Assembly (NCBI RefSeq): GCF_963853765.1
Contig: NC_088854.1
Coordinates: 43,028,001 to 43,092,000 of the forward strand
Reading direction: 5' to 3'
DNA: 64,000 nt
Source: Magallana gigas
Lineage: Eukaryota
Below the pieces are notes generated by a model. The model was not told the DNA's origin and ran no database searches. It saw only the letters and a program-made list of their open reading frames with translations. A program made the position numbers and the translations under genes. Positions within the stretch are counted from its first letter, which is position 1, and each line of letters opens with the position of its first letter. Shown here piece by piece: positions 1 through 21,173 of this stretch.

Positions 1-515
1 AAATTTATGTAAAAGCATCCTCAGGTAATGTAGTTTCAATCGTGTTCAAATCATGATCATCAGGGGTAGGGTGAGCCACAAAAGGGGATCCAATTTTACA
101 TAGGAAAAAAATTTAAACTATTCTAAAAAACTCATGTGTAAAAATATATGCAAGCTATATATGACATATTGTTGATTCTCAATTGTTTAGACTGTGGCCC
201 CTGGACAATTATTGGGCCCCACAAGGGTTGAAAGCCTGATGTAGGTAAATATATATATATCTATGAGCAATTGTTAAGATCATCTCTAGAACTGTGAAGC
301 TTAATATGTAATATAATGGCTATGAAATCATCCTGTTACAAAAAGGGCTTAATGCTTAACATTAGAATATCTGGAGAAAAATTTATTTTCACAAATCTAT
401 TCTACTACATACGTTGTCAATATATTTTGTATATGACTCCATAAAGCTCCATAAAGCTGATTTTATTATGGCTATTGTTCCTCAGGTGAGAGATGTGGTC
501 CATGGGCCTTTTGTT
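1..515 (+). mobile_element. 3' part of a Helentron-associated (HINE-like) non-autonomous element, truncated by the window start
   Basis: Shares blocks with the 3158-3875 copy (aagcatcctcaggtaatgtag...; ctcaggt...atgtg..ccatgggcct.ttgtt terminus). Confidence 0.6.
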
Positions 516-1143
516 AGTGCATTAATAACTGTACCCCTGGTAATTGGATATCTGTGATATGAACTTAGTTATTTCATTATTAAATGAAAGAAGACCATCT
601 ATTATCTAAATCTATTAGCTACCAAGGTTTTTCACCATGAACATTTGTAACATTATACAGCAGAAATTGTTTTCGAAGGTTAAATGCAAATTACATATAT
701 TTTGTAATGCATGGTTAAGACAAAGTTCAAGGGCCCTATAGATGGATGTACAGATTTTTTTACCTTATAGGTATTTCATAATAATTTAATAATGAACTTG
801 TTTTTTATGAGAGTGAAGTAGTGTAGTAATAAAGATTCGGGTTAGCATAGTACTGTTTTCTTGGTATCTTTTTATATTGTTTTTAAGATAATTGTTTTAT
901 CTGTAAGGGATTTAAATCTGCCTTAATGTATAATCTTTTTATATTTCCTTACAAGTAATCAAATTTTTATTGAAAACATCATTCTTAAAAAATGAGGGTT
1001 TCAAAACATCACTTAAATGAAAACTTAATAGAATTTAGTGTAAAACAAAACATTTATCATTCTTCATTTTCCATTTGCATTCATTGATAATGTTAATTGT
1101 GAGCATGAAATTTGAGATTCTGTTTTTGTTTAATTACATACAG

Positions 1144-3271
1144 CCTGTTCCTACAACATTACCTATACGAGACTTTGTGGAAATTAACACGGTAAGTCTA
1201 TAGACAGAATTTAAAATAGTCCTTAGATAACTGTTTTCGTCCTATTTGCATGAAATTACTTCACCATTACTTCACCATTGTTTTTCTGAAAGGAGAAATA
1301 AGCATATAAACTACTGTAAATTCCTAATTAAACGTGAGAATTAATATCCGCATAAATTTGCCATCTCTCAGATTTTAAAATCTTGCTGTTATTTTTCTGA
1401 CAGGTGTAAACTCAAGAAACTATGATAAAAATCTAGTGTTCGCGATTTCATATTCTTGCGATTTGATGCAGAATGGTTGAATCGCGGAATTAGTACTAGT
1501 GAAATATAAGGAATCTACAGTAACCTATCTTTGGGAAGGTTTGGGTGTTTATAGATGATATGCCACTTCTAGTACTACATATTGTTGCATTTATTCTGTA
1601 AGTTTCGTTTGACCTTTACAATTATCCTTTACAGTTATCACATTTAGTACTTGAATCTAAATGTTGGGGGAAGAAAAAAATCTTTAACAAATTTCAACTA
1701 TGTACATGAAATAGAGCTCATGTTTAGATCCAGAAATGTTTCCAGTTGGGGGGGGGGGGGGGGGGGGGGAGGTTGGGGTTGTGAGATAGTTTATAGTTGT
1801 GTTTGCTGGGGGGGGGGGGGGCTGACTACCCCCACCCACCCACCCCCTTCCCTGTTTTTATACCCCCGCTCCGAAGGAGAGGGGGTATACTGTTTTACCC
1901 TTGTGTGTCTGTCTGTCTGTCTGTCCGTCTGTCTGTCCGTCCGTAACAAAAATTTCTGTCGCATTTATCTCAGCAACTATTTATCCCAGATGCTTGAAAT
2001 TTTTACACAGTGTTTGTTAAGGCATGCCATATCGTGGGATATATTTTTGTACCAATCGGATGTCAACTTCCTGTTAAATGACGACTTTGCTTATTTTTTA
2101 ACTAAAATTTTCAAACAAATTTTCGTCAAAGATTTCTCAGCAACTATCTATCGCAGATGCTTGAAATTTTTACACAATATTTGTATAGGCATGCCGTATC
2201 GTGGGATATATTTTTGTACCAATCAGACATCAACTTCCTGTTAAATGACGACTTTGTTTATTTTTAGCCAAAATTTTCAAACAAATTTTTGTCAAAGAAT
2301 TCTCAGCAACTGTTTATCGCAGATGCTTGAAATTTTAACACACTATTTGTTTTGGCATGCCATATTGTGGGATATATTTTTGTACCAATCAGATGTCAAC
2401 TTCCTGTTAAATGACGACTTTGTTTATTTTTAGCAAAAATTTTCAAACAAATTTTTGTCAAAGAATTCTCAGCAACTGTTTATCGCAGATGCTTGAAATT
2501 TTTACACATTATTTGTTTAGGCATGCCATATTGTGGGATATATTTCTGTACCAATCGGATGCCAGCTTTCTGTTAAATGTCGACTTTGCTTATTTTGCAT
2601 ATTCACATCAGAGCGGGGGTATCACTAGTGAGCATTGGCTCACAGATATCTTGTTATTTATGTATGAGTTATGATATACAATAGAATGAATGTTTAGTAA
2701 TCACCACCAACAATTTGATTGCAGACAGAGGCTGTGATTCAGACAAGGATAAATATAAAATCAGAGAGCCTGCCTCAGGAGGTCAGTAAAGTAAGGTCAT
2801 TGAAATGTAGAATGTACTTTATTCATGGTGTCCAATACATGTCAATTTGAATGTAGCACACTTTATGGGGGCACTAGTATATATTCCTTATGTGTTATCT
2901 TACTTTATCATGCATCATCTGCTGTTCTCTTACTTACCTTGGTGTGTCTGTTTCACATTATTTCTTAATAGTACAGGTATATCGAGAGTGGATAAGTTCA
3001 ATTATCGTTTGAAATTTTCTAATATATTACAGCTTAATATTAGTTTCTTTGAATATTATGGATTTGTTGCATGCAATAAGTTAAATGTCCATCCTAAACA
3101 ATTATTTGAATGAGTTATATGACCTCTTTATCTAAAGTTTTCAGATATCTCTCAGGGTTTTTTTTAGCTCACCTGAGCCTTTGGCTTTTCTAATCAAAAT
3201 TTGTCTGTTGTCTGTCGTTGTCATCTTCGTTGTTGTTGATGAAAACTTTTCACAATTTCATCTTCTTCTCT

Positions 3272-6286: not shown

Positions 6287-7158
6287 TTTAAATTTAATGG
6301 TTATATAGTTATCATGTACTGTGGTAAAGCTGTGTGTGGACTGTTACAAACTAGCCACTCAGCTATGACTTTTATTTCAAATAGAGACATTTTGTGATAT
6401 TGTAGTTGTGATAAAGTACTTGTGATACTGTACCTATCATTCCTGGCTCCCACTAACTCCTGTACATTCCAGTGTCTGATGGGTTGTTTTTCTTTTTCCA
6501 ACTGTGAATTGATGTTTGAAGGACTAGAATTCAATTCAGTGGAAAAAATATCCATTTCCTTGTTTAAGTTTTATTTTTGGAAGCAATGTGTCACAATCAT
6601 GATTGACTGGTGAACTGTGCTAGAAGTGTGTTGAGAGGTGTCTAAATTTTAGTTTATATTTTATTATTGATGCTTTTTGTTTTCTATCTCATTAAGATTT
6701 TAACTGTGGTATTTTAAGTGTAGTTTTTATTGTTTTGTTAAAAATTGAATTCGTTTAAACTGTAGCAACAGTATAACACACTGTCTGATGCAGGTGATCA
6801 AACGGTCATCATTGGGCGACGGCGGTAACGTTAGAATATTGTCTGATACCTGAATGTCATCACTCATGCTTAAATCATGTGCCATATGTGATTGTAGTAC
6901 ATCAAGAACTGATACCATTTTGTTTGTAATTTATACAATAAAGATTTACAGAAATACAGAAATGTTATAAAATATGTATGTTTCGGTAATTAGAGTATCT
7001 GAAAGTACAAGTACATATTGAGACCTGATATATTTAAATTATTAAAAAAAGATAACATTTTTTTTATTAGTAATCATGAATAAATGAAATTAGAAATGAT
7101 TTACAATATTTAACCAAAACAATTTAATCAGACATTAAAACATTGTATTCAGTTGACA

Positions 7159-9400
7159 TCACCGGCCTCTCCACCTGTAAATGAAATGGACAAACATCAG
7201 AGATTAATTTTGATAAATCAGTCTAGTCCTTTAAAAATATATGTGTGTTTTGTACATTTATACTTGGAATAAAGAGACCTCAACATGTGAATACTTAAAG
7301 AGAAACGTGAATCGAACACTTTGGTAAACCGCTTAAACCCCAAGCGGAAGTCAAGCTGGGGGGGGGGGGTGGTCTGGACCCCTTCCCCCTCTCGGAAAAT
7401 TGAAATGTCTTTAACTAATATATAAAATAACCGGAAAAAAATCCCCCGATTCCACCCCAACCCCAAGCAAACTCAAATATCCATCGGAACCCCCCCCCCC
7501 CGGAAAAAAATTCTGGATCCGCACATGAACCCCCATTGTGGAAACAAATCTAGGCAAATTAAAATACTGCAGATAATAATCAAATCGTGTCTGTAGATTT
7601 TTGCCAACATTTGAAAATAATTAACCCGTTTTTGCCACCGACACATCCGTGTTCAATGCACATGACATCTCGATGTACGGTTTTTAGCTCACGATGCAAG
7701 CAAAAACCAAAGGCTAAAATTTCCAGGTGTAAAGTAATTTCATAGTTATAGCACGTAATATCAAGAGAACCTGGTATCCCTCGCCTTAATTTTGGCAGGA
7801 ACCTTTTACTTAAAATAAATATATTCTTATATGGATAAATAATTTTTGTTGTCAACCCCATCCTATACCTTCGAAGTTGATACATTTACATGTATTTTTA
7901 AAAAGCATATTGTTTCGGTCTGATCATATGTTAAAAAAAAAAGAGAAGAAAAAAAACTAAAACCGATTACTAGTGATCCTGATTTTTTAACTTGTATTTA
8001 CCTTCTTATGAAGAAGAGCTATGTATAAAGATATAGGAAAAAGATCAAATTTTAAATCAAAATATTTGGATTTTTTTCACTAGTATTACTTTATTGCCAA
8101 AATCATATTTTCATATGTCAAAGTTTAAGGTTGGTCATTTTGATAAATTTTTGACCACCCAGCCTCCTTAAAGTCATGCGATCTATAGATAAGGTTATGC
8201 CCAGCATTTTGTGGGATATCTTACCATATTTACTCTGGTTAGGAATAAAGTTCCGTATAATTTGAGAGTAGTTGTCTCTGTTAAGCCACAAAGCTTTAAA
8301 CCTCTTAGAATTGACATCACTGACGTAGTCAATGTAGCGCTCTCCTTCGTCTGTTTCGTTTACCGAAAGTTTGTACATCTGCAAGAGTCATAAATCAAAT
8401 AAAATTCAATAATCGTCGGCAGCAGCAACAATACACCTTACCTCTCAAAAAACAAGGAAGATCGAAAAAATTTGAAAATTGATACGAATCTGAAATTACC
8501 ATTGTTTCTTAAATTTGAAAGAAACAACGCCTAAAAAATACCTAGATTTCATAATCATAGGGGCTGTTGTGGTTGTACCTTGAAACCTATGGGACTGTGG
8601 TCCACGATATTGATGACGTCAACATCGTTGTCTACCCAGACCTCGATCCGACCTCTGTCAATGGAATACACCCTGTTCACCATGTGTAGCTTTAAGCCAT
8701 CGAAACCAGCATCATCTACAGAGAAAAGAACACACCGTTTCATTTTTTAATTTTAAATACATTTAATTTGCATACCAGTACGTATCAATGACAAAATATA
8801 CTTTAACGATAATAATGCAATGTCTCAAAATTTACAAACCAAATAAAAGTGTTGAAACATTTCGATCCAGAAGTTTGTGTTGTCGTAGATCCAGCTCAGA
8901 CACTCTCTTTCCATGGAAGGTGATTTTAATGGTTTTTGATTCGTTCCCCCGCATGCCGGATGCCACGAATCTGAAAGTGGAGGCGGGGCGATCACAGACG
9001 GTGACGATAGGGATCATGGAGGCCGGAGACAAGCCGTCGTCCGTACATGGGGTGTAGTCCCACAGACACTCGGTGAACACCCGGTAATGGGGCAACCTGC
9101 GCAAGCATCTCTTAATGGACCGAAATTTGGATAAAATGATGTATCCGGGGCCACAGGGACATTTTGATGTTTGGAAAAAGGGCACCGCGGTTACAAGTTC
9201 ATCTATATGTCGGGAAGAAAAAGAGAGAACAGGTATTTAAAAAAATGCATTGTATCATTTTGGTTATGACATTGATTATCTCATTATTATTATGAAGATA
9301 TACCTGTGAATTTCTTTAGAACCTCCTCTCCAATCAAACTCCATGCTAATCGCACGTCTGCAGTATGGAGACTGTCAAACACCCTTTCTGACATGAGCAT
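7159..9400 (-). CDS. Gene A: gasdermin/pejvakin-like protein, ~294 aa, 7 exons
   Basis: Exons 9400-9304, 9202-8840, 8715-8579, 8378-8225, 7713-7626, 7293-7264 and 7174-7159 are all GT-AG, phase-consistent and total 885 nt; polyA signal at ~7062. Protein MLMSERVFDSLHTADVRLAWSLIGEEVLKKFTDELVTAVPFFQ...RLPHYRVFTECLWDY...ITFHGKRVSELDL...VINIVDHSPIGFKMYKLSV...GIHMLRSLYSKWRGR. Motifs align without gaps to recalled GSDME segments RPKYQFLSLTLGDV, SSFGTLRKQEVDL and VLEIPAATTIAYGVIELYV. The last three exons are less certain. Confidence 0.7.
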
Positions 9401-9548
9401 GCTTATACATTTGTGTATTTCATTTCATAATGACGTCATAATATCATTCCTTGTGGCGTCACAACAATGAAAAAATGTTTTGATGCTATTAAAACGTCAC
9501 AATACTTATGACGTCATAATGTGCTGAAGTTGACAAGAAGAAGGAAAC
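9401..9548. promoter_or_regulatory. Putative bidirectional promoter with CRE/ATF-like palindromes
   Basis: Only 148 bp separate the divergent ATGs. Perfect ATGACGTCAT palindromes at 9430-9439 and 9508-9517; imperfect sites TGGCGTCA (~9453) and AAACGTCA (~9492). Confidence 0.6.
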
Positions 9549-12500
9549 ATGGATCCGTACCTCTATAAGACGCTTAAAAATTGTGATGCCAAGCGTTGTT
9601 GGGCACTAGTGAAAAATGTCATCGGCGTTCAATTAATAGGTTAGTCCATTCAATTACAGAATTTAATAAAGACAAACTGAATAATTCGACCAATGCTACA
9701 ATATTCGAATTATTTTATTGTATCATAATAATGCGCTTTAGTATTTTCAGTAATAAATGCACTAGTGTGTTTAACATTTTGTTTTTCGCAGATGATGACG
9801 TTATCATGGTACCTTTTTTACAAGAGGGACTGCATTACGATCTTAGCCGTGTCGTAATCAAAGAGGAGAGGTCTCCAATGCAAAAACTGGCACGGGTGGC
9901 TCCAGGAGCGATCTCTGTCGGAAAGCTGACGGATTTTGTCAAGGATGAAGTGATCCCCGGCACGTTTAATAGGCTTAGTGAAGTACAAAAGGTGGAAACC
10001 ATCCACAACCAACGCTACGTGTTCGAAGAATCCGATATGAAGCACGGCGTGAAGAAAACTGTTCGAGTGGAGATTCTCGGTTGTGACCACTATACCTTGT
10101 GGAGCAATCCTGAATGCAACAGTCTGGTGGTGGATTTCGACAACAGAGGTAACATTCACACAGTTTCTGTGTAGACTTCTTAGTATTCTTGTATTTATCC
10201 ACTTATTTTTACATTTTCCAGTGTCTATGTCTTTGATAACACTACGAATCGATTTTGAAATGTATAGTCCAATACTTTTCATCGATGACTATTTCGTTAT
10301 TTAAAATTTACATGCAGTTGCTGAAAAATATAAGTAAATTAAATAAGGAATCATTCTTTAAATTTTATGAGGTAATCGAAGACGATCGGAGGTGGTGAAA
10401 TCTAAAAACCTTAAATATGAGCTTTATTGGAATTGATCACCTCCGACCGTATATAAACAACTCATAATACTGATAGACGATTCCTTAAAGGGACTTGGAC
10501 ACGATTTGAGATCAAAAAATTTATTTCTATTTTTTATGTATAAAATGGTTTACTTGTGCATTTTAAATGATTGACCAAAATATTAAATATTAAAGTCAAG
10601 TTACAAACGAGATACAGAGGTAAGAATTGATAGTTATGTAAACAAAGCTCGAGTCTTATAGTTGTTTACAAAAATGTAATGTAGAATTTTACCATTTCTT
10701 AGACAAAATGACATGTAAAAAACAATTTAAACTAATTCAATATCTTCATAAATACTATTATCAACAAAAGAAAGTTACATTTGATTAAAACTTACATCAA
10801 TACAACACATATGTAAAAATGACAATATTCGAGCTTTGTTTACAACACAAAGAATTATGAACTCTGTATCTTGCTTATAACTTGATATTTTAGCTTCAAA
10901 ATTTTACATAGTATTATAAACTTCTATATTTATCAGTATAAACATTGAAAATGGAAAAACAAAATTTGAAAATTTTAAGTCAAATCGTGTCCAAGTCCCT
11001 TTAATCCTTGAATTTCCGTGTATTTTAAAGCTTTATATCTTTACATTTATCATTATATTTATCCACCTTGCAAACTTGAACATAATGATTTTAAGCGTCT
11101 TAAATTGAAATAACTGGTATAAAACTGTAGTTTTGCAACCATCAGATCCATAAATATGCTGTGAAGAATTGTATATCAATATTGTCGTTGAAGTTTGTAT
11201 CGTCAGCGAAAAACAATCAAGAACATGCATTAATTAATAAGCATTTGTTAGGACGATGTTTTTGACCTTGAATTTTACGTAATACTGTTCCTATTCACGT
11301 TCGCTTTACCTGAAACGAAAAGATTTGGGCCTTGTCATTGCCAATTGTTAACGGCATCAAAAGCCTACATAATGTTCAAATGTTTGTTTTTATCATGAAA
11401 AATGGGTGTGTGTTGCTTTACTATAACGTTTTCACAAATTCACTCGTTTTCTCCGAACTCGCATTTTTTTTCTCGTTGACGCGGTCAGTATCATTGTTTT
11501 AAGAAATAAATACCAACTTTTCTGGGAAAAACAAATGGTGCAATTAAACTTCAAAAGGTGTATATTTTATTATCTTATTTTAGTGTTATTTTTAACCAAA
11601 TTGGCCTTTCCAATGTTTTTCCCCAGTTGGTCTAGTGCAAGTATGTGTAAAATTCATATAAAGTCAAGAAAAAAAATCCCCTACAAATCCAAAATATTTG
11701 CATTTGATTGTTTAAAAAAAATCTTATACGTGTCCTTTAAGTAATTTTGAAGGCATTACTGGAAAAAAATATAGATCTTACATATATACACGTAGTCATT
11801 TGGAAGGCGTTATTGGAAAAAAATATAGATCTTACATATATACATGTTGGACATTAACATACATATCTCATGTATTGGCAACTGATATATTGTAGGATTC
11901 CCCTATGTGAAGAAATTCTACCTGATATATGACGCGTTCTACGCTCACCACGTCAAAGTTCACGTCCGTATCAACGACGAGGTGGACGAGTTCTGCGTCA
12001 ACCAGCACATCCCGATCGGCTTCCGATTGAAGCGCTACACGATCAAGCCCAATGGGCTGATCGGGCCCATCAAAGATATCACCAGCAGCGAGTGGGACGT
12101 CCACTGGATCAAGAGCTCCATGTTTAGGAACCCCATGGATGCCCTTCCCAGAGTTCCTGACTCAAATGCTCCTAGCACAAGTAAGTGGACATACCTTTTT
12201 TTGGTTTATCAATTCTTTAATAAATGTATAATGATAAAAAAGAAACTGATTTGAAGGCTTTGAAAACAACGCTAATGAATTTTTGGTAGGCAAAATGTAT
12301 AGCTAAATTGATATACAATGAAAAAATGGGTTATAAAATCCCGTTTGGGATATTATACCCAAAACGGGATATTCTCATGCAAATGTGTACAGTGCAAACA
12401 TGGAAATTTCTGGTGTGTTAAGAATGTGGCAAAAAAGCATTGTAATAGATAAAATGAAACAACTCTTTTGTACTCTGACTGTTTAAGGAGCTAGAGTGAT

Positions 12501-14859
12501 CCCTCGGTAGATCCCAAACTTCTTGGGTATCAATCTTAAAAACTTATAGAAAACATCCTTACCAATTACGTTGTGCATCTGATAATTGACTAGTATGTTT
12601 ATGCGGCTTAATATGCTAACATGGTAACATTTTGGAAACCTTTGTCGTCAAAAATATGATATGAAATAGCGGTAGTAGAATAAGTATGGCATGATTAGAT
12701 AAATATAATCAAAGTTATACGTTGACGTTTAAATTTGGGGGGAAATTGTGGGGTTGGGTAATTTGGAGTTCAGTTGTTAATGGAGAAGAAGCTAAAGTCG
12801 GAGAGCACCAAAAGTCAGACGTTTTTCTATAACAAGAACAACAATATTAAATATATTCATAGACAGGTTTACTACCATTAGACAAAAGGAAATAACATAC
12901 ATTGTTATACTTTCATGTTAAATACTGAAATCTGATTGGTTAAGACGCAGTTAATAATATTTACTATTACCCTAAGCGTTAGCAACGCACTTGGCAACGG
13001 GTAACATTAAAAAATGTTACATGCGCGAAAATTATGCGCGTACGGTTCGCTGTAGAATTCACGTTATTCCTATATAAAAGCAGTAAAATTTTCTTAAAAA
13101 TTTTAAAAAAGACATTCAGTATAACAAAATAAATAGTGCCTGTTTGGGAGGATAACAGTTGAAATTGACACCCCTCGAAAACCATTGTCAACCTCCGCTT
13201 CGCGTCGGTTGACAATGGTTTTCTCGGGGTGTCAATTTCAACTGTTACCCTCCCAAACAGGCACTATTTATATAATATAAGCATGTTAAGGATGTGATAT
13301 GAACTTTGTTGGTCACGTGATCAAATTACATGAAGCTTGAAGGCTCCCCAAAAGGTTTGACCACATACCATGGTTGGGAAAGACGACTTTATCAAAAATT
13401 ATTTATATGTCTATTTATATACACAACGAAGCATGACACAAACCATAAAAGGTTATGATGGTCATTTTGACGTCTTATTTTGACATTAGCCCATGAAAAA
13501 GTTCACCAGGATATAAAAAATTTTTTGACCCTTATCACTTCTCATTAAAACAAATATTTTCAAATGCAAATACATGTAGAACTGTTTTAACAAGACCTTG
13601 GACTTTCGGTAGTATGTTACTATCTATTTCTTGCGCCAAAACAAGTAAAAAAATGACGCTGGTTTGAAGTGAAATATACACCGATTGCGTAGTCTTAGCT
13701 CAAAAGCCGTTTTCAATGAGCTATGGCTGAGTGGCCAGCAATTAAATAGACAGGGCTACGTCACATTGATGTTTGACACAACTACCCAAAGTCCAAGCTC
13801 CTGTTTATGTAAAATAAGACTTTTTTTCTTCATCAACAGGTCGAGCCCGATGAAGTTTTTCAGCATCTTGGATTTTCCATTCCGTCATATAATTTGTACT
13901 TTTATCTAACAGCATGTAAAAATAAATCTTAACATTTTACTTTTCTTTTCTTTCAATTCCATTTACATTCAAATACATTTTAAAATCTACAGCATCCCGA
14001 TTCTGTTTCATTTACAATGTATGTTTCTTAAAATCATATACATTGTAATAGGCATGCGCGATTACATTCCATTCTCAATAATTATTTGTAGAAGTGTGAT
14101 TTAAAGTAAACATTTGTTTTAATACATTTGAATTAATGTGTTAGAATTTTTTTTGGAATTTACCCTTGTGTCAGAAGACAGCTTCTTTACCCCCTCCACT
14201 TTCTCCATTTAATGCTTTGAACTTGCAAGTTCAGATGATTTAAGATTGTTTAGAAGATAACGTTTCTGAAGCAATTATTTTGTGGATTTACTAGAATTAC
14301 AAAGAAACTAAATTAATGTTCATTTAAAAACGTTTAATTCTAAGACTTTTAAAATAGAATTAACTTATTGTAGTAAATTATGTAACCATACACCAAGAAA
14401 CGATATAAAGTCCGTTCACAAAAAAAATTCTATAAGAAAATGTCAAATTGTTTTGCTAATAGTATTAGTTAATTAGAATTTGGATGAGAGAACACGAAAT
14501 AAATGAGAATTGGGTGCAAGAACACTGGGGCCATGCATATGTAATATAGCTTGTCGAGTGAGGGTGCCTGAGGCTGTATATATGTAAACCACCGGTGTAC
14601 ACACGGTCAAAGGTCTCTCATCTATCATGCTAAAGAATATATATACAATGAAATGTCAAAAAACATTAATAACCATACTGACAAACATACAGTTCCGAGG
14701 CACAAAGAACAGGGATCCTATTCGAAAGCAAGGCCAACGCGGTTCTTAAATCGTTTATACCAGGAGTATAGTAGCTGGTGCCACATGGATTTGGATCACG
14801 TGTTTTGGTGGAGCGGCCGGACGGGGGCCACAAAAATAATACAAAGCCATAAAAAATGA
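9549..14859 (+). CDS. Gene B: gasdermin/pejvakin-like protein, ~299 aa, 4 exons; paralogue of gene A
   Basis: Exons 9549-9639, 9792-10148, 11896-12180 and 14693-14859 total 900 nt with all junctions in phase 1; AATAAA at ~15022. Protein MDPYLYKTLKNCDAKRCWALVKNVIGVQLIDDDVIMVPFLQEGLHYDLSRVVIKEER...EFCVNQHIPIGFRLKRYTIKPNG.... VPFLQEGLHYDLSRVVIKEER aligns without gaps to recalled PJVK [21 protein letters not shown]. The last exon is less certain. Confidence 0.72.
10489..11000. mobile_element. Kolobok-like MITE (512 bp) with TTAA target-site duplication
   Basis: TTAA|AGGGACTTGGACACGATTTGA ... TCAAATCGTGTCCAAGTCCCT|TTAA: a perfect 21-bp TIR. TTAA TSD with purine-purine termini is typical of Kolobok. 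Confidence 0.8.
12905..13275 (+). mobile_element. ~370-bp non-autonomous element ending in a long hairpin (copy 1)
   Basis: Near-identical to 46734-47103. Terminal stem-loop at 13129-13271 has ~65-bp arms and loop TCCGCTTCGCGTC. Confidence 0.85.
13588..13806. mobile_element. MITE of the AACAAG..CTTGGACT family
   Basis: TIR AACAAGACCTTGGACT / AGTCCAAGCTCCTGTT. The interior is the reverse complement of the 22861 and 58704 copies. Confidence 0.65.
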
Positions 14860-15908
14860 ACAGGGACGACAAACACTCTAGCTTATTCATACATGTATGC
14901 CTTGTTTTATGTTTGACGCATGATCACAGCAGACAAACAGCGAATTTACTCAGAGACTACACTTTTATTACGCGCGACAGGCTGCTCCCTTTTTAATGAC
15001 GGTGGAAAAACAGGGAAGTCAATAAAATGATACTTGACATTTTGTTCTTTGATATATTCAGAAAAGACACACATTGTAGTTAGAATTAGTTTTATTGCGG
15101 AAATTCAACAATAACAGTGTTTGAAGTAATACCTAGTAAATGATTCATCAATCAATTCGGCATGTTTTCACTCATATTACATGATGTCCTTGCATGGAAA
15201 ACATAAACAATCTGTCATTTCTACTGTCCAACTTCTTTTATTCTAACAGAGTTTCCTCGGTGCGTGTTTGTGGCTTACCTCATTTACAGGATAAGTGAAA
15301 GAGGACAAGCCAGAAAAAAAGCAATTAATACGTCAGACGAACAAAAAGACACATTACAGGCAAAGTCGACACCCTTGTCTCATTCCAGTAGGGGGATGTA
15401 ATTAGGATTTGTATGTACAGCGGGACCTTGATCATGTAGTGTACTATAAATACCATGTATTTCTATCACGTCTTAAGTGAAACACTAAATATACTTATCT
15501 AGCACATTTTTGTCGCCAATGGCCCGCTAAAGACTATCACTCTAGTCCATGCGTACACAAACGTGTATGTTTCTTAACTTGAATGTGTTTTTGTCAGTGT
15601 CATTTTTCCCCGGTCTATATTGATGACATTTTCGACATAGGCCCACAAGGTACAAATAATAACATATTTAATGTCTCTGTTCATAACAAGGTATAGAAAA
15701 ATTCACGTACTCCGCTAGGTTATCAATCACACGGACAAGAAAACATCTAATTAAGCGATTGGTTTTATGAATCAAGTTGCCCTAAAATCACACATCAATT
15801 AACTAAACAACATTGTACCCTGGATTTTTATGTACAACCATATAAACACGAGAACAAACAAAAACTCAGTCTTTGTTTTTCCTCACATCCGTATTGCGTA
15901 TAAGAATA

Positions 15909-18835: not shown

Positions 18836-19105
18836 GTTTTAACAGCTAGAGCTCACACTTTCTTTCAGTATTCTAATTCGCGAAGAGAAGCTCATATTCA
18901 TGGACTGTCAAAATCGTTTTGCCAAGATCTGTTCTGTTGTGTGAAATTCACACAGTTTCAAATGAAATATACAGCCCTGGATGAGGCCGGTCAAAGTACT
19001 CCTATGTAATAGCCAACGACTGAACAGTTAACCACGGGTAGATCCCGTCTACATCAAATCGGAGTTTGTTACGTACTGCCCAAAGTCCAACGGCTCTAAA
19101 TATTC
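18836..19105 (-). mobile_element. Inverted degenerate copy of the 38613-38957 MITE
   Basis: The reverse complement shares TTGGACTTTGGGCAGTAC, GGTTAACTGT, GCTGTATATTTCA and CAGATCTTGG blocks with 38613-38957. Confidence 0.55.
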
Positions 19106-19816
19106 TGTGGTGGTGGTGGTTTTGTTGGAGAGAATGGATCAGTTTTAGTTTTTCATCGACAAAATTAAACGATTATCATTTGTGATATTGGTTTTGTATC
19201 AAGCTAGACAGTTTGCAGATGTTTGAAGTTTGTTTTAACCATATCGTTCATGTGGTGGTCAGCAAGAGGATACACTGAGTGATCATTTTAACTCAAAAAT
19301 ATACGACAGAAAACTTCTTGTTAACTATAATTTGAATTACAGTCCTCTTTAAGCAGAAAGGGACCAAAGTTATGTTCAATTTATCTCACAGAAATATGGA
19401 GGCGGAAATTTTACCTAAATCATGCCTAGAACCGTTATAATTTCTTCATACCACAATTCCTAAGAATCAGATAAGGGTCGCATTCGGGCATCTTCCCTAG
19501 TCAAGGGTGTCTGATCTGCACCTCACCTCACAAACTTGTGGGGAGCAGAGTGGACCGAAAACCCTTGGCTAGCGAAGATGGCATAAGGGGAAATGGACTT
19601 TCACTTGGACATACTGTGCATACACAAATAAAAATGAAATGAAATGTATGGAGGCAATAGTTGTAAGCTTATGTTGTTCGTTTTTATATAAAAGAAGGAA
19701 AGTCCTATCGATCTAAATGATTTGCGTAACTAGTCGTAATTTCATCTGATAAGGTAAGGCTATTCAGTTGTCTGTTAAGGCGAGCAATGTGGCCCACGGG
19801 CCTTTGTTTATATTTC

Positions 19817-19886
19817 TTTCTCTATTATTTAGAGCGTATACACTTTTTAAAAAGATATTGTGTATACTCTCTAAATAATAGAGAAA
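19817..19886. repeat. Short inverted repeat / hairpin
   Basis: 27-bp arms (TTTCTCTATTATTTAGAGCGTATACAC, 1 mismatch) with a 16-nt loop. Confidence 0.85.
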
Positions 19887-20119
19887 ATTAGAGGTGCACT
19901 CCCCCAATCCTTAACTGTTTTCAGATTCATTTCAACTACAACAGATTACCTGTGTTGAAATAATAGTAATCGTTTTTACATTTAAATGTTTTTTTTCCCT
20001 TCAAATGTTCTAGAAAATTGCACATTAACATAATGATCGCATTACAGACATTGACATTTAATGACAGATTAAGTCTCAAATTTGTAATAATACATCACTG
20101 TAATTCTATAAATAGTAAG

Positions 20120-21173
20120 CACAGGGGCATCGTATCCGCGCTACACTCTATGACATATATATAATAATACACAAGGGAAGAATCGAAAGTAGGACACGAT
20201 TTGTAAACAATGTCAAAAACAACTTACTTCACAAAAGTTACGCAAATCCTCGCACACATTGTTGCAAATGTTGTCAAAAAACACGTTCACACTCAAATAT
20301 TCCTAATAAACTCGGTAAAAAGCGTTTTTATCCCATTAAAACCGCTGTCTGCTGCAGAAACCCAATCTCTTCGCCCAAGAAAAGATAACTCTGTACTTTC
20401 TCTCTATATATGTTCAGTAATGATAGTAGAAATTTCGGCAGTAAACTGTGTAAAATGTCTGGGGAAATTTTCGTCGTATATGTTACTACCGTAAGCATAA
20501 TAAGTTAACATGCGTTCCGATAAATTTGGCATGTACTTTAATTAGCGTAATTTAAAAAACAAATTAATATATTTCCTATCATTTAATCTTTTGTAGAAAC
20601 GTAAATATACTAGGCTAGTAATTTGATATTGACAATTAAAACAATGCTGAAATTCTTAGGCAACGACAATTAATTTTGAAGGTTTAAATTGGAATAATTG
20701 CAAAGACAAAAAATGATGAATTATGAGTATTTTAATTATTGAATAAAAAAATAATATAATTTTTTTTTATGTGAACACCAACGTAGTTTTCCATTAACAT
20801 TTTAGAGAAGAAAAAAATATTTAAAATTTCCCCAGACATTTTACAGTTTACCGCCGAAATTTCTACTATCATTACTGAACATATAGAGAGAGAAAGTACA
20901 GAGTTATCTTTTCTTGGGCGAAGAGATTGGGTTTCTGCAGCAGACAGCGGTTTTAATGGGATACAAACGCTTTTTACCGAGTTTATTAGGAATATTTGAG
21001 TGTGAACGTGTTTTTTGACAACATTTGCAACAATGTGTGCGAGGATTTGCGTAACTTTTGTGAAGTAAGTTGTTTTTTGACATTGTTTACATTTCGTGTC
21101 CTACTTTCGATTCTTCCCTTGTGTATTATTATATATATGTCATAGAGTGTAGAGCGGATACGATGCCCCTGTG
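20120..21173. mobile_element. Foldback-type non-autonomous DNA transposon with a 7-bp TSD (P-superfamily-like)
   Basis: ~350-bp near-perfect TIRs (CACAGGGGCATCG...CGATGCCCCTGTG). Direct repeat TAGTAAG at 20113-20119 and 21174-21180. Confidence 0.85.

What the first reader, a model, noticed from the sequence alone, without database searches (positions are those of the whole stretch)
8579..12180. Both paralogues look like 'fingerless' gasdermins: the two membrane-inserting beta-hairpins are largely deleted
The flanking core strands align with recalled GSDME, but the loops that refold into transmembrane hairpins are very short. Hairpin 1: A has FRFVAS-GMRGNESK-TIKITF and B has YVFEES-DMKHGVKK-TVRVEI, about 8 aa versus roughly 26 in GSDME. 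Hairpin 2: A has IEVWV-DNDVD-VINIV and B has VHVRI-NDEVD-EFCVN, 5 acidic aa versus roughly 32. The same truncation in both copies implies it predates the duplication and was retained. Inference: they may not form a classical bilayer-spanning barrel. They could instead be decoys or dominant-negative caps of a full GSDME, or non-lytic membrane-binding oligomers.
Basis: inference. Interest (0 to 1): 0.8.

Follow-up and report, generated by a model that had tools for sequence, protein, structure and literature searches.

The report
Oyster C11orf42-like stub-fingered gasdermin pair
Two neighbouring Pacific-oyster genes encode small proteins with the gasdermin fold but only stubs of its membrane-piercing hairpins; they belong to the known C11orf42/DUF4663 family, for which this was published in 2022.

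Summary
Both genes are intact, spliced as read and expressed. A is on the minus strand (258 aa) and B on the plus strand (248 aa). They are identical to Magallana gigas RefSeq XP_011434932.3 and XP_011434920.3.

RNA contigs from three studies join the exons directly, so no hidden exon restores the short segments.

Each domain is about 36-45 residues shorter than a gasdermin N-domain. B covers 170 of 182 residues of a GSDMB pore model built without its barrel. It gains only 9 more against the 221-residue model with the barrel. Short stubs remain, and I could not map the missing residues one by one.

The finding is not new. B is Pfam DUF4663 (C11orf42 family, E 2.4e-27). A is a fast-evolved member of the same family. 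PMC8986115 (2022) already described human C11orf42 as a gasdermin fold without membrane-penetrating regions. Hairpin lengths are constant across 49 family members.

The decoy idea is untested. This scan noted the same gene pair once more (s1-399268), on this same stretch and not on other DNA.

The parts
9304..9400 (-). Gene A, coding part of exon 1 (ATG at 9400-9398); transcripts reach at least 9445
   Evidence: RNA contig joint 9202/9304 and pieces 9304-9415 and 9304-9445; translation; identical to XP_011434932.3
8840..9202 (-). Gene A exon 2: helix alpha1 end, core strands and the first beta-hairpin
   Evidence: Joints 9202/9304 and 8715/8840 with GT..AG ends
8934..8957 (-). Gene A first hairpin tip, GMRGNESK (residues 115-122; modelled turn at G118-N119)
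   Evidence: DSSP strands 98-117 and 120-136 in the model; sequence
8579..8715 (-). Gene A exon 3: the second beta-hairpin
   Evidence: Joints 8715/8840 and 8378/8579
8618..8632 (-). Gene A second hairpin tip, DNDVD (residues 182-186; modelled turn at D182-N183)
   Evidence: DSSP strands 161-181 and 184-207
8225..8378 (-). Gene A exon 4 (last core strands and start of the tail)
   Evidence: Joints 8378/8579 and 7172/8223, the latter with cut +2
7149..7174 (-). Gene A exon 5, coding end (GEAGDVN, then stop)
   Evidence: Joint in run X1; translation
9401..9548 (.). 148-bp spacer between the two start codons, holding both 5' UTRs and a shared divergent promoter
   Evidence: A contigs reach 9445 and B contigs start by 9507. 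The same head-to-head layout occurs in Saccostrea cucullata, with start codons 115 bp apart
9549..9639 (+). Gene B, coding part of exon 1 (ATG at 9549)
   Evidence: tblastn of P0003; RNA joint 9637-9640/9790-9793
9792..10148 (+). Gene B exon 2: core strands and the first beta-hairpin
   Evidence: Joint 10146/11894 (cut +2) in three runs; GT..AG ends
10034..10057 (+). Gene B first hairpin tip, DMKHGVKK (residues 112-119; modelled turn at H115-G116)
   Evidence: DSSP strands 105-114 and 117-133
11896..12180 (+). Gene B exon 3: the second beta-hairpin, last strands and the tail
   Evidence: Joint 10146/11894; tblastn
11973..11987 (+). Gene B second hairpin tip, NDEVD (residues 176-180; modelled turn at N176-D177)
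   Evidence: DSSP strands 156-175 and 178-199
13840..13853 (+). Gene B exon 4, coding end (completes S, then RAR and stop)
   Evidence: The loose end behind 12182 in three runs matches 13842-13871 exactly; translation

Best explanation
A and B are the Pacific-oyster members of the C11orf42/DUF4663 family, a metazoan branch of gasdermin-fold proteins.

Each protein consists of the gasdermin 'palm' (a mixed alpha/beta globular domain) and the 'thumb' (helix alpha1). The two 'fingers' are reduced to short beta-hairpins that end in charged 2-residue turns. There is no C-terminal repressor domain and no signal peptide.

Shown:
- family membership
- the gasdermin fold
- the intact, expressed and conserved state of both genes
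- the constant short hairpin length across the family
- the conserved head-to-head arrangement in two oyster genera

Inferred: the four strands per subunit are about 10 residues too short each, and their tips carry charges on both faces. The proteins therefore cannot build a bilayer-spanning barrel. They most likely act as soluble or peripheral, non-lytic modules, through protein-protein contacts, oligomerisation or surface binding to membranes. This is the scaffold role proposed for human C11orf42.

A arose from a B-like gene, probably within molluscs. It diverged very fast and has since been kept under purifying selection beside B, on a shared divergent promoter.
For: Family:
- B (through P0003, 98% identical) scores 96.4 bits, E 2.4e-27, on Pfam DUF4663, where the cut-off is 25 bits.
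- The Saccostrea orthologue is named 'C11orf42-like' by NCBI.
- A is 21% identical to B and aligns end to end (E 1e-9). The equivalent introns have the same phase.
- A scores 58.7 bits, E 2e-20, on a profile built from 46 family members that excludes the A type.

Fold:
- The B model has pLDDT 94.8 and pTM 0.88. The A model has 85.1 and 0.83.
- The ESM Atlas neighbours are pejvakin and GSDME clusters, TM 0.61.

Short fingers:
- B aligns 170 of 182 residues of the GSDMB pore model without barrel (8et1), but only 179 of 221 of the model with barrel (8et2).
- B aligns 184 of 242 residues of the GSDME pore.
- In GSDME, 159 residues form the unchanged globular domain and the rest refolds into the hairpins (PMC13534543).
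- The hairpin regions are 29 and 44 aa at the median in 49 members.
- The tips are 29-36% charged at the median.

No missing exons: RNA contigs from three studies; exact RefSeq identity.

Selection: dN 0.24 for A and 0.13 for B against ML dS of 1.9-2.5. The gene pair is conserved in Saccostrea cucullata.

Prior literature: PMC8986115.
Against: - No experiment bears on function in any member of the family.
- No residue-level superposition was available, so the exact length of the stubs beyond the palm is not measured. My estimate is about 10-30 residues in total, from aligned counts of 155-178 against autoinhibited forms and 171-191 against pore forms.
- There is no sequence similarity to gasdermins. 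Homology rests on fold and topology alone.
- The remaining hairpins are long (10-20 residues per strand). A shallow or partial membrane insertion, or a short barrel in an oligomer, is not excluded.
- dS is saturated, so the dN/dS values are rough.
Confidence: 0.8

Rival explanations
1. Decoy or dominant-negative cap. A and/or B joins a growing oyster GSDME (CgGSDME) oligomer through the palm interfaces and blocks ring closure or insertion, damping pyroptosis.
Against: Identity to gasdermins is about 10% in structural alignments and nil by profile search, so conserved subunit interfaces are unlikely. The family has kept the same form across animals and evolves as a lineage of its own. No interaction data exist.
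Confidence: 0.07
2. Still membrane-active. A and B together, or each alone, assemble into a ring whose short four-stranded stubs form a shallow barrel that perturbs or thins membranes. This would resemble the two-partner gasdermin-like RCD-1 of Neurospora.
Against: The strands are about 10 residues short each. Both faces of the tips are charged. RCD-1 partners are allelic and kill when they meet, whereas A and B are co-expressed in healthy animals. Most family members seen here were not examined for a linked partner. The differences in Z between pore and inactive forms are within 1, which counts as tied.
Confidence: 0.07
3. Similar fold without common descent. The DUF4663 fold resembles the gasdermin palm by convergence, or through the wider MACPF/CDC-like sheet.
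Confidence: 0.04
4. Gene-model artefact. Exons that encode the hairpin extensions were missed, for example in the 1.7-kb intron of B.
For: RNA depth is high inside B intron 2, at 10446-11036.
Against: That depth belongs to a dispersed repeat with loose ends at both borders, and it is never joined to B exons. Contigs of three studies join 10146 to 11894 directly. In A the intron at this place is only 124 bp. The models equal RefSeq and the Saccostrea orthologues in length.
Confidence: 0.02

Closest known systems
Human C11orf42 (UniProt Q8N5U0) and its homologues, Pfam PF15668 DUF4663
   Different: The oyster proteins are shorter, at 248 and 258 aa. The vertebrate homologues seen here have 267-322 aa, and skates and rays carry tails of about 900 aa. 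Oysters also carry a second, fast-evolved paralogue (A) head to head with the canonical one. A falls below the Pfam threshold, at 16.8 bits.
Trichoplax adhaerens gasdermin (PDB 8jyw pore, 8jyv crystal)
   Different: The Trichoplax protein has about 45 more residues over the aligned span and forms a membrane pore. Identity is 8-15%.
GSDME and pejvakin (Pfam PF04598), including oyster CgGSDME
   Different: There is no Pfam Gasdermin hit and no Gasdermin_C domain. A and B are 36-42 residues shorter over the aligned span. GSDME refolds about 87 residues into two long transmembrane hairpins (PMC13534543).
GSDMB pore model without the transmembrane barrel (PDB 8et1)
   Same: B aligns with 170 of its 182 residues. 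B is essentially a gasdermin N-domain minus the barrel.
   Different: 8et1 is a truncated model of a real pore-former. In A and B the truncation is in the gene.
Neurospora RCD-1-1 and RCD-1-2 (PDB 8jyz, 8jyx, 8jyy)
   Different: RCD-1 partners are allelic incompatibility factors that form pores with full hairpins. A and B are linked, co-expressed paralogues with stubs.

Membership tests
Pfam PF15668 DUF4663 (C11orf42 family) | Score above the curated Pfam gathering threshold (25 bits) | tested here: met
   B (through P0003, 98% identical; B itself equals XP_011434920.3) scores 96.4 bits, E 2.4e-27, over residues 2-220. The B exons alone score 30.9 and 28.2 bits.
Pfam PF15668 DUF4663 (C11orf42 family) | The same threshold applied to copy A | tested here: not met
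   A scores 16.8 bits, on the N-terminal 50 residues only. A is still related: 58.7 bits, E 2e-20, full length, against a profile of 46 family members without A-type rows. A aligns collinearly with B, has matching intron phases, and has the same fold. A is best filed as a divergent subfamily.
Gasdermin (Pfam PF04598 pore-forming domain) | Sequence match to the Gasdermin profile or to solved gasdermins | tested here: not met
   There is no PF04598 hit at E up to 1 for B or up to 10 for A. The family profile hits no gasdermin chain in the PDB at E up to 10.
Gasdermin (Pfam PF04598 pore-forming domain) | Gasdermin N-domain fold (palm sheet plus helix alpha1) | tested here: met
Gasdermin (Pfam PF04598 pore-forming domain) | Two extension segments long enough to refold into bilayer-spanning beta-hairpins | tested here: not met
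   The domain is 36-45 residues shorter than gasdermin N-domains. B aligns 170 of 182 residues of the barrel-less GSDMB model but only 179 of 221 of the model with barrel. The tips are charged. A residue-level superposition was not available.
Gasdermin (Pfam PF04598 pore-forming domain) | C-terminal autoinhibitory domain (PF17708) with a protease-cleavable linker | tested here: not met
   The proteins end 30-40 residues after the fold, and there is no PF17708 hit. Short gasdermins such as the Trichoplax and bacterial ones also lack this domain, so its absence does not exclude membership by itself.
Gasdermin (Pfam PF04598 pore-forming domain) | Oligomeric pore formation in membranes | not testable with these tools
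   This needs liposome leakage, cell-death and EM assays.
RCD-1-like two-component gasdermin-like system | Two partner proteins that hetero-oligomerise into a pore | not tested

The most novel reading that the evidence does not exclude
A and B form a hetero-oligomeric, non-lytic gasdermin-fold assembly: a ring or arc with a shallow charged collar in place of a barrel. It would work on membranes or as a regulator of CgGSDME pyroptosis. The divergent-promoter pair, conserved between Magallana and Saccostrea, would keep the two partners in proportion. This would give the first function for the C11orf42 family.
Probability: 0.1. Interest if true: 0.7.

Novelty: new member of a known kind. Interest (0 to 1): 0.3.

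Why it matters
The C11orf42/DUF4663 family is a widespread animal offshoot of the gasdermins with no known function. Here it was seen in molluscs, a crinoid, a tunicate, cartilaginous fish and birds, besides mammals.

The oyster locus adds three modest points:
- The short hairpins are invariant in length across the family. This looks like an old, selected state, not decay.
- Oysters keep a second, very divergent paralogue that Pfam misses. It is locked head to head with the canonical gene, which hints at joint use.
- Both genes are expressed and under purifying selection.

None of this changes the published picture. It offers an invertebrate system with a known lytic GSDME in which the scaffold or regulator idea could be tested.

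Tried and rejected
- Pfam scan of the single exons of A gave nothing useful. A's membership needed the full-length protein and a custom profile.
- The DUF4663 family profile against all PDB sequences gave no gasdermin hit. The only hit was a chance match to proabylysin at E 1. A sequence-based residue mapping onto gasdermins was therefore impossible.
- I could not obtain a gasdermin sequence or any coordinates through the tools. No hhalign against a gasdermin alignment was made, and no residue-level superposition or measurement of stub length in angstroms.
- The high RNA depth in B intron 2 looked like a possible hidden exon. It is a dispersed repeat with inverted arms and is not joined to B.
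- The raw-read run X19 gave no reads on the exons at the sampled depth, so I make no statement on strand or expression level.
- NG86 dS failed because of saturation. Only the ML estimates are given.
- The placement of A in the tree is weak (92/75) and lies on a branch of 2.67, so I draw no firm date for the duplication.
- Literature searches for DUF4663 and for the two LOC and XP identifiers found nothing.
- PMC6007975 (the GSDMA3 pore paper) is not held.
Full report
**What is there.** The stretch holds two divergently transcribed genes. Gene A lies on the minus strand. Its coding exons are 9304-9400, 8840-9202, 8579-8715, 8225-8378 and 7149-7174, giving 258 aa. Gene B lies on the plus strand. 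Its coding exons are 9549-9639, 9792-10148, 11896-12180 and 13840-13853, giving 248 aa. All introns have GT..AG ends. The two start codons are 148 bp apart.

**Check of the gene models.** I laid Logan contigs of three RNA-type runs from three studies, plus one raw-read run, on 6900-12800. The contigs show every joint of A: 9202/9304, 8715/8840, 8378/8579 and 7172/8223. They also show every joint of B: about 9639/9792, and 10146/11894 in all three runs. The sequence that follows 12182 in three runs matches 13842-13871 exactly.

In A the intron there is only 124 bp. In B the 1.7-kb intron holds a dispersed repeat at 10485-11004. That repeat explains the very high depth there and is never joined to B exons.

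My translated models are identical to Magallana gigas XP_011434932.3 (A) and XP_011434920.3 (B). Both are named 'uncharacterized protein'. The 'missing exon' refutation therefore fails, and the window is Pacific oyster.

**Family.** B's exons already hit Pfam DUF4663. The full-length P0003, 98% identical to B, scores 96.4 bits, E 2.4e-27, and shows no Gasdermin hit. NCBI names the Saccostrea cucullata orthologue 'C11orf42-like'.

An exhaustive HMMER search found 72 representatives. Those carrying names include a scallop, a mussel, a unionid, two gastropods, a crinoid, a tunicate, a chimaera, skates and rays, and an ostrich. Several are named 'C11orf42 homolog' or 'C11orf42-like'.

A is only 21% identical to B. 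It is collinear over its full length (E 1e-9), and the equivalent introns have the same phase. It scores 58.7 bits (E 2e-20) against a profile of 46 family members that excludes A-type sequences. It stays below the Pfam threshold, at 16.8 bits.

A has orthologues of 256-258 aa in Crassostrea angulata, Saccostrea echinata and S. cucullata, at 62-99% identity. In S. cucullata the same head-to-head pair is present.

In a maximum-likelihood tree the A clade sits on a very long branch (2.67) next to the bivalve B group, with weak support (one fragmentary row under 200 aa was left out). Against S. cucullata, dN is 0.24 for A and 0.13 for B, with ML dS of 1.9-2.5. dS is saturated, so the ratios of about 0.13 and 0.05 are rough. 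Both genes are maintained.

**Fold.** AlphaFold2 with the family alignments gave confident models: pLDDT 94.8 and pTM 0.88 for B, 85.1 and 0.83 for A. I ran Foldseek for B and the Foldseek-independent VIA search for both models. In both, only gasdermins and the gasdermin-like RCD-1 come out on top.

| Target | B | A |
|---|---|---|

In the ESM Atlas the nearest clusters to B are pejvakin and GSDME, at TM 0.61. By sequence nothing links the family to gasdermins. This agrees with the '1% identity' remark in PMC8986115.

**The hairpins.** In B they are H115-G116 and N176-D177. In A they are G118-N119 and D182-N183. By the order of elements they sit where gasdermins have HP1 (beta3-beta5) and HP2 (beta7-beta8).

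The strands are not short: 10-20 residues each. But the domains are 36-45 residues shorter than gasdermin N-domains over the aligned spans. B has 199 residues against 241 for GSDME, and A has 204 against 240.

The clearest measure comes from GSDMB. B aligns with 170 of the 182 residues of the pore model deposited without its transmembrane barrel (8et1). It aligns with only 179 of the 221 residues of the model with the barrel (8et2). About three quarters of the barrel part has no counterpart.

In GSDME the unchanged globular domain has 159 residues, and about 87 residues refold into the two hairpins (PMC13534543). The oyster proteins align with 184-186 residues. They therefore keep roughly a quarter to a third of the finger length as stubs.

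The tip regions are rich in charge on both faces. B has EESDMKHGVKKTVR and KVHVRINDEVDEFC. The family medians are 36% and 29% charged.

The two hairpin regions have the same length in nearly all 49 aligned members. The medians are 29 and 44 aa, and the maxima 31 and 56. The shortening is a property of the whole family and far older than the A/B duplication.

No tool returned residue-level alignments or coordinates. Placing the deficit at the tips is an inference from element order and aligned counts.

Other papers mention C11orf42 only as a testis and cancer-expressed gene. Nothing was found on DUF4663 or on the two oyster loci. Oysters have a separate, functional CgGSDME.

**How it most likely works.**
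- Shown: a cytosolic-type protein (no signal peptide is evident in the sequence; no predictor was run) made of gasdermin palm, thumb and stub fingers, with no repressor domain. It is conserved and expressed.
- Inferred: it cannot span a bilayer. It acts as a non-lytic module through protein contacts, oligomerisation or peripheral membrane binding.
- A conserved Lys just after the first turn (K119 in B, K122 in A; 76% of members) and the invariant P-x-x-F after the second hairpin are candidate functional sites.
- The decoy reading (capping CgGSDME) and a hetero-oligomeric A plus B assembly remain possible but have no support beyond architecture and linkage.

**Verdict.** The finding is a rediscovery of a published property of a known family, with two modest additions: a Pfam-invisible paralogue, and a conserved divergent gene pair. 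The scan noted this same gene pair once more (s1-399268), on this same stretch and not on other DNA.

Noticed in passing
window 10485-11004 (inside B intron 2): An element of about 520 bp whose ends are inverted copies of each other (about 190 bp, 70% identity). RNA-contig depth is very high (up to about 1600) and contigs break at both borders. It is a dispersed, transcribed foldback or MITE-like repeat, not part of B.
   Followed up: partly
window 13129-13271 (inside B intron 3): A near-perfect palindrome: two 70-nt arms, 93% complementary, separated by 3 nt. It looks like a foldback or MITE-like element.
   Followed up: partly
window 9401-9548: The spacer between the A and B start codons is only 148 bp. 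A transcripts reach 9445 and B transcripts start by 9507, so the two start regions lie about 60 bp apart. The same layout is seen in Saccostrea cucullata (L001, start codons at 9885 and 10001). I did not test promoter motifs.
   Followed up: partly
P0035 (Narcine bancroftii, 1084 aa) and P0038 (Leucoraja erinacea, 1180 aa): In a ray and a skate the DUF4663 domain sits at the N-terminus of proteins with 850-950 further residues that hit no Pfam family. One is named 'mucin-5AC-like'. This is a domain architecture not seen in the other members.
   Followed up: no
Gene A residues 43-53 (window about 9144-9172, minus strand): The motif QTSKCPCGPGY is invariant in all three A-type orthologues compared, and replaces the family's conserved Y-D-L. 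Two cysteines in a loop near the start of the sheet could be a lipidation or metal site. This is only a lead.
   Followed up: no
L001 (Saccostrea cucullata) 1-3227, 14923-15836 and 19088-23127: The neighbours of the pair in Saccostrea are a TRP-type ion channel with ankyrin repeats, a Temptin_C protein and a CUB/LDLa protein. I saw no obvious functional link to the pair.
   Followed up: no
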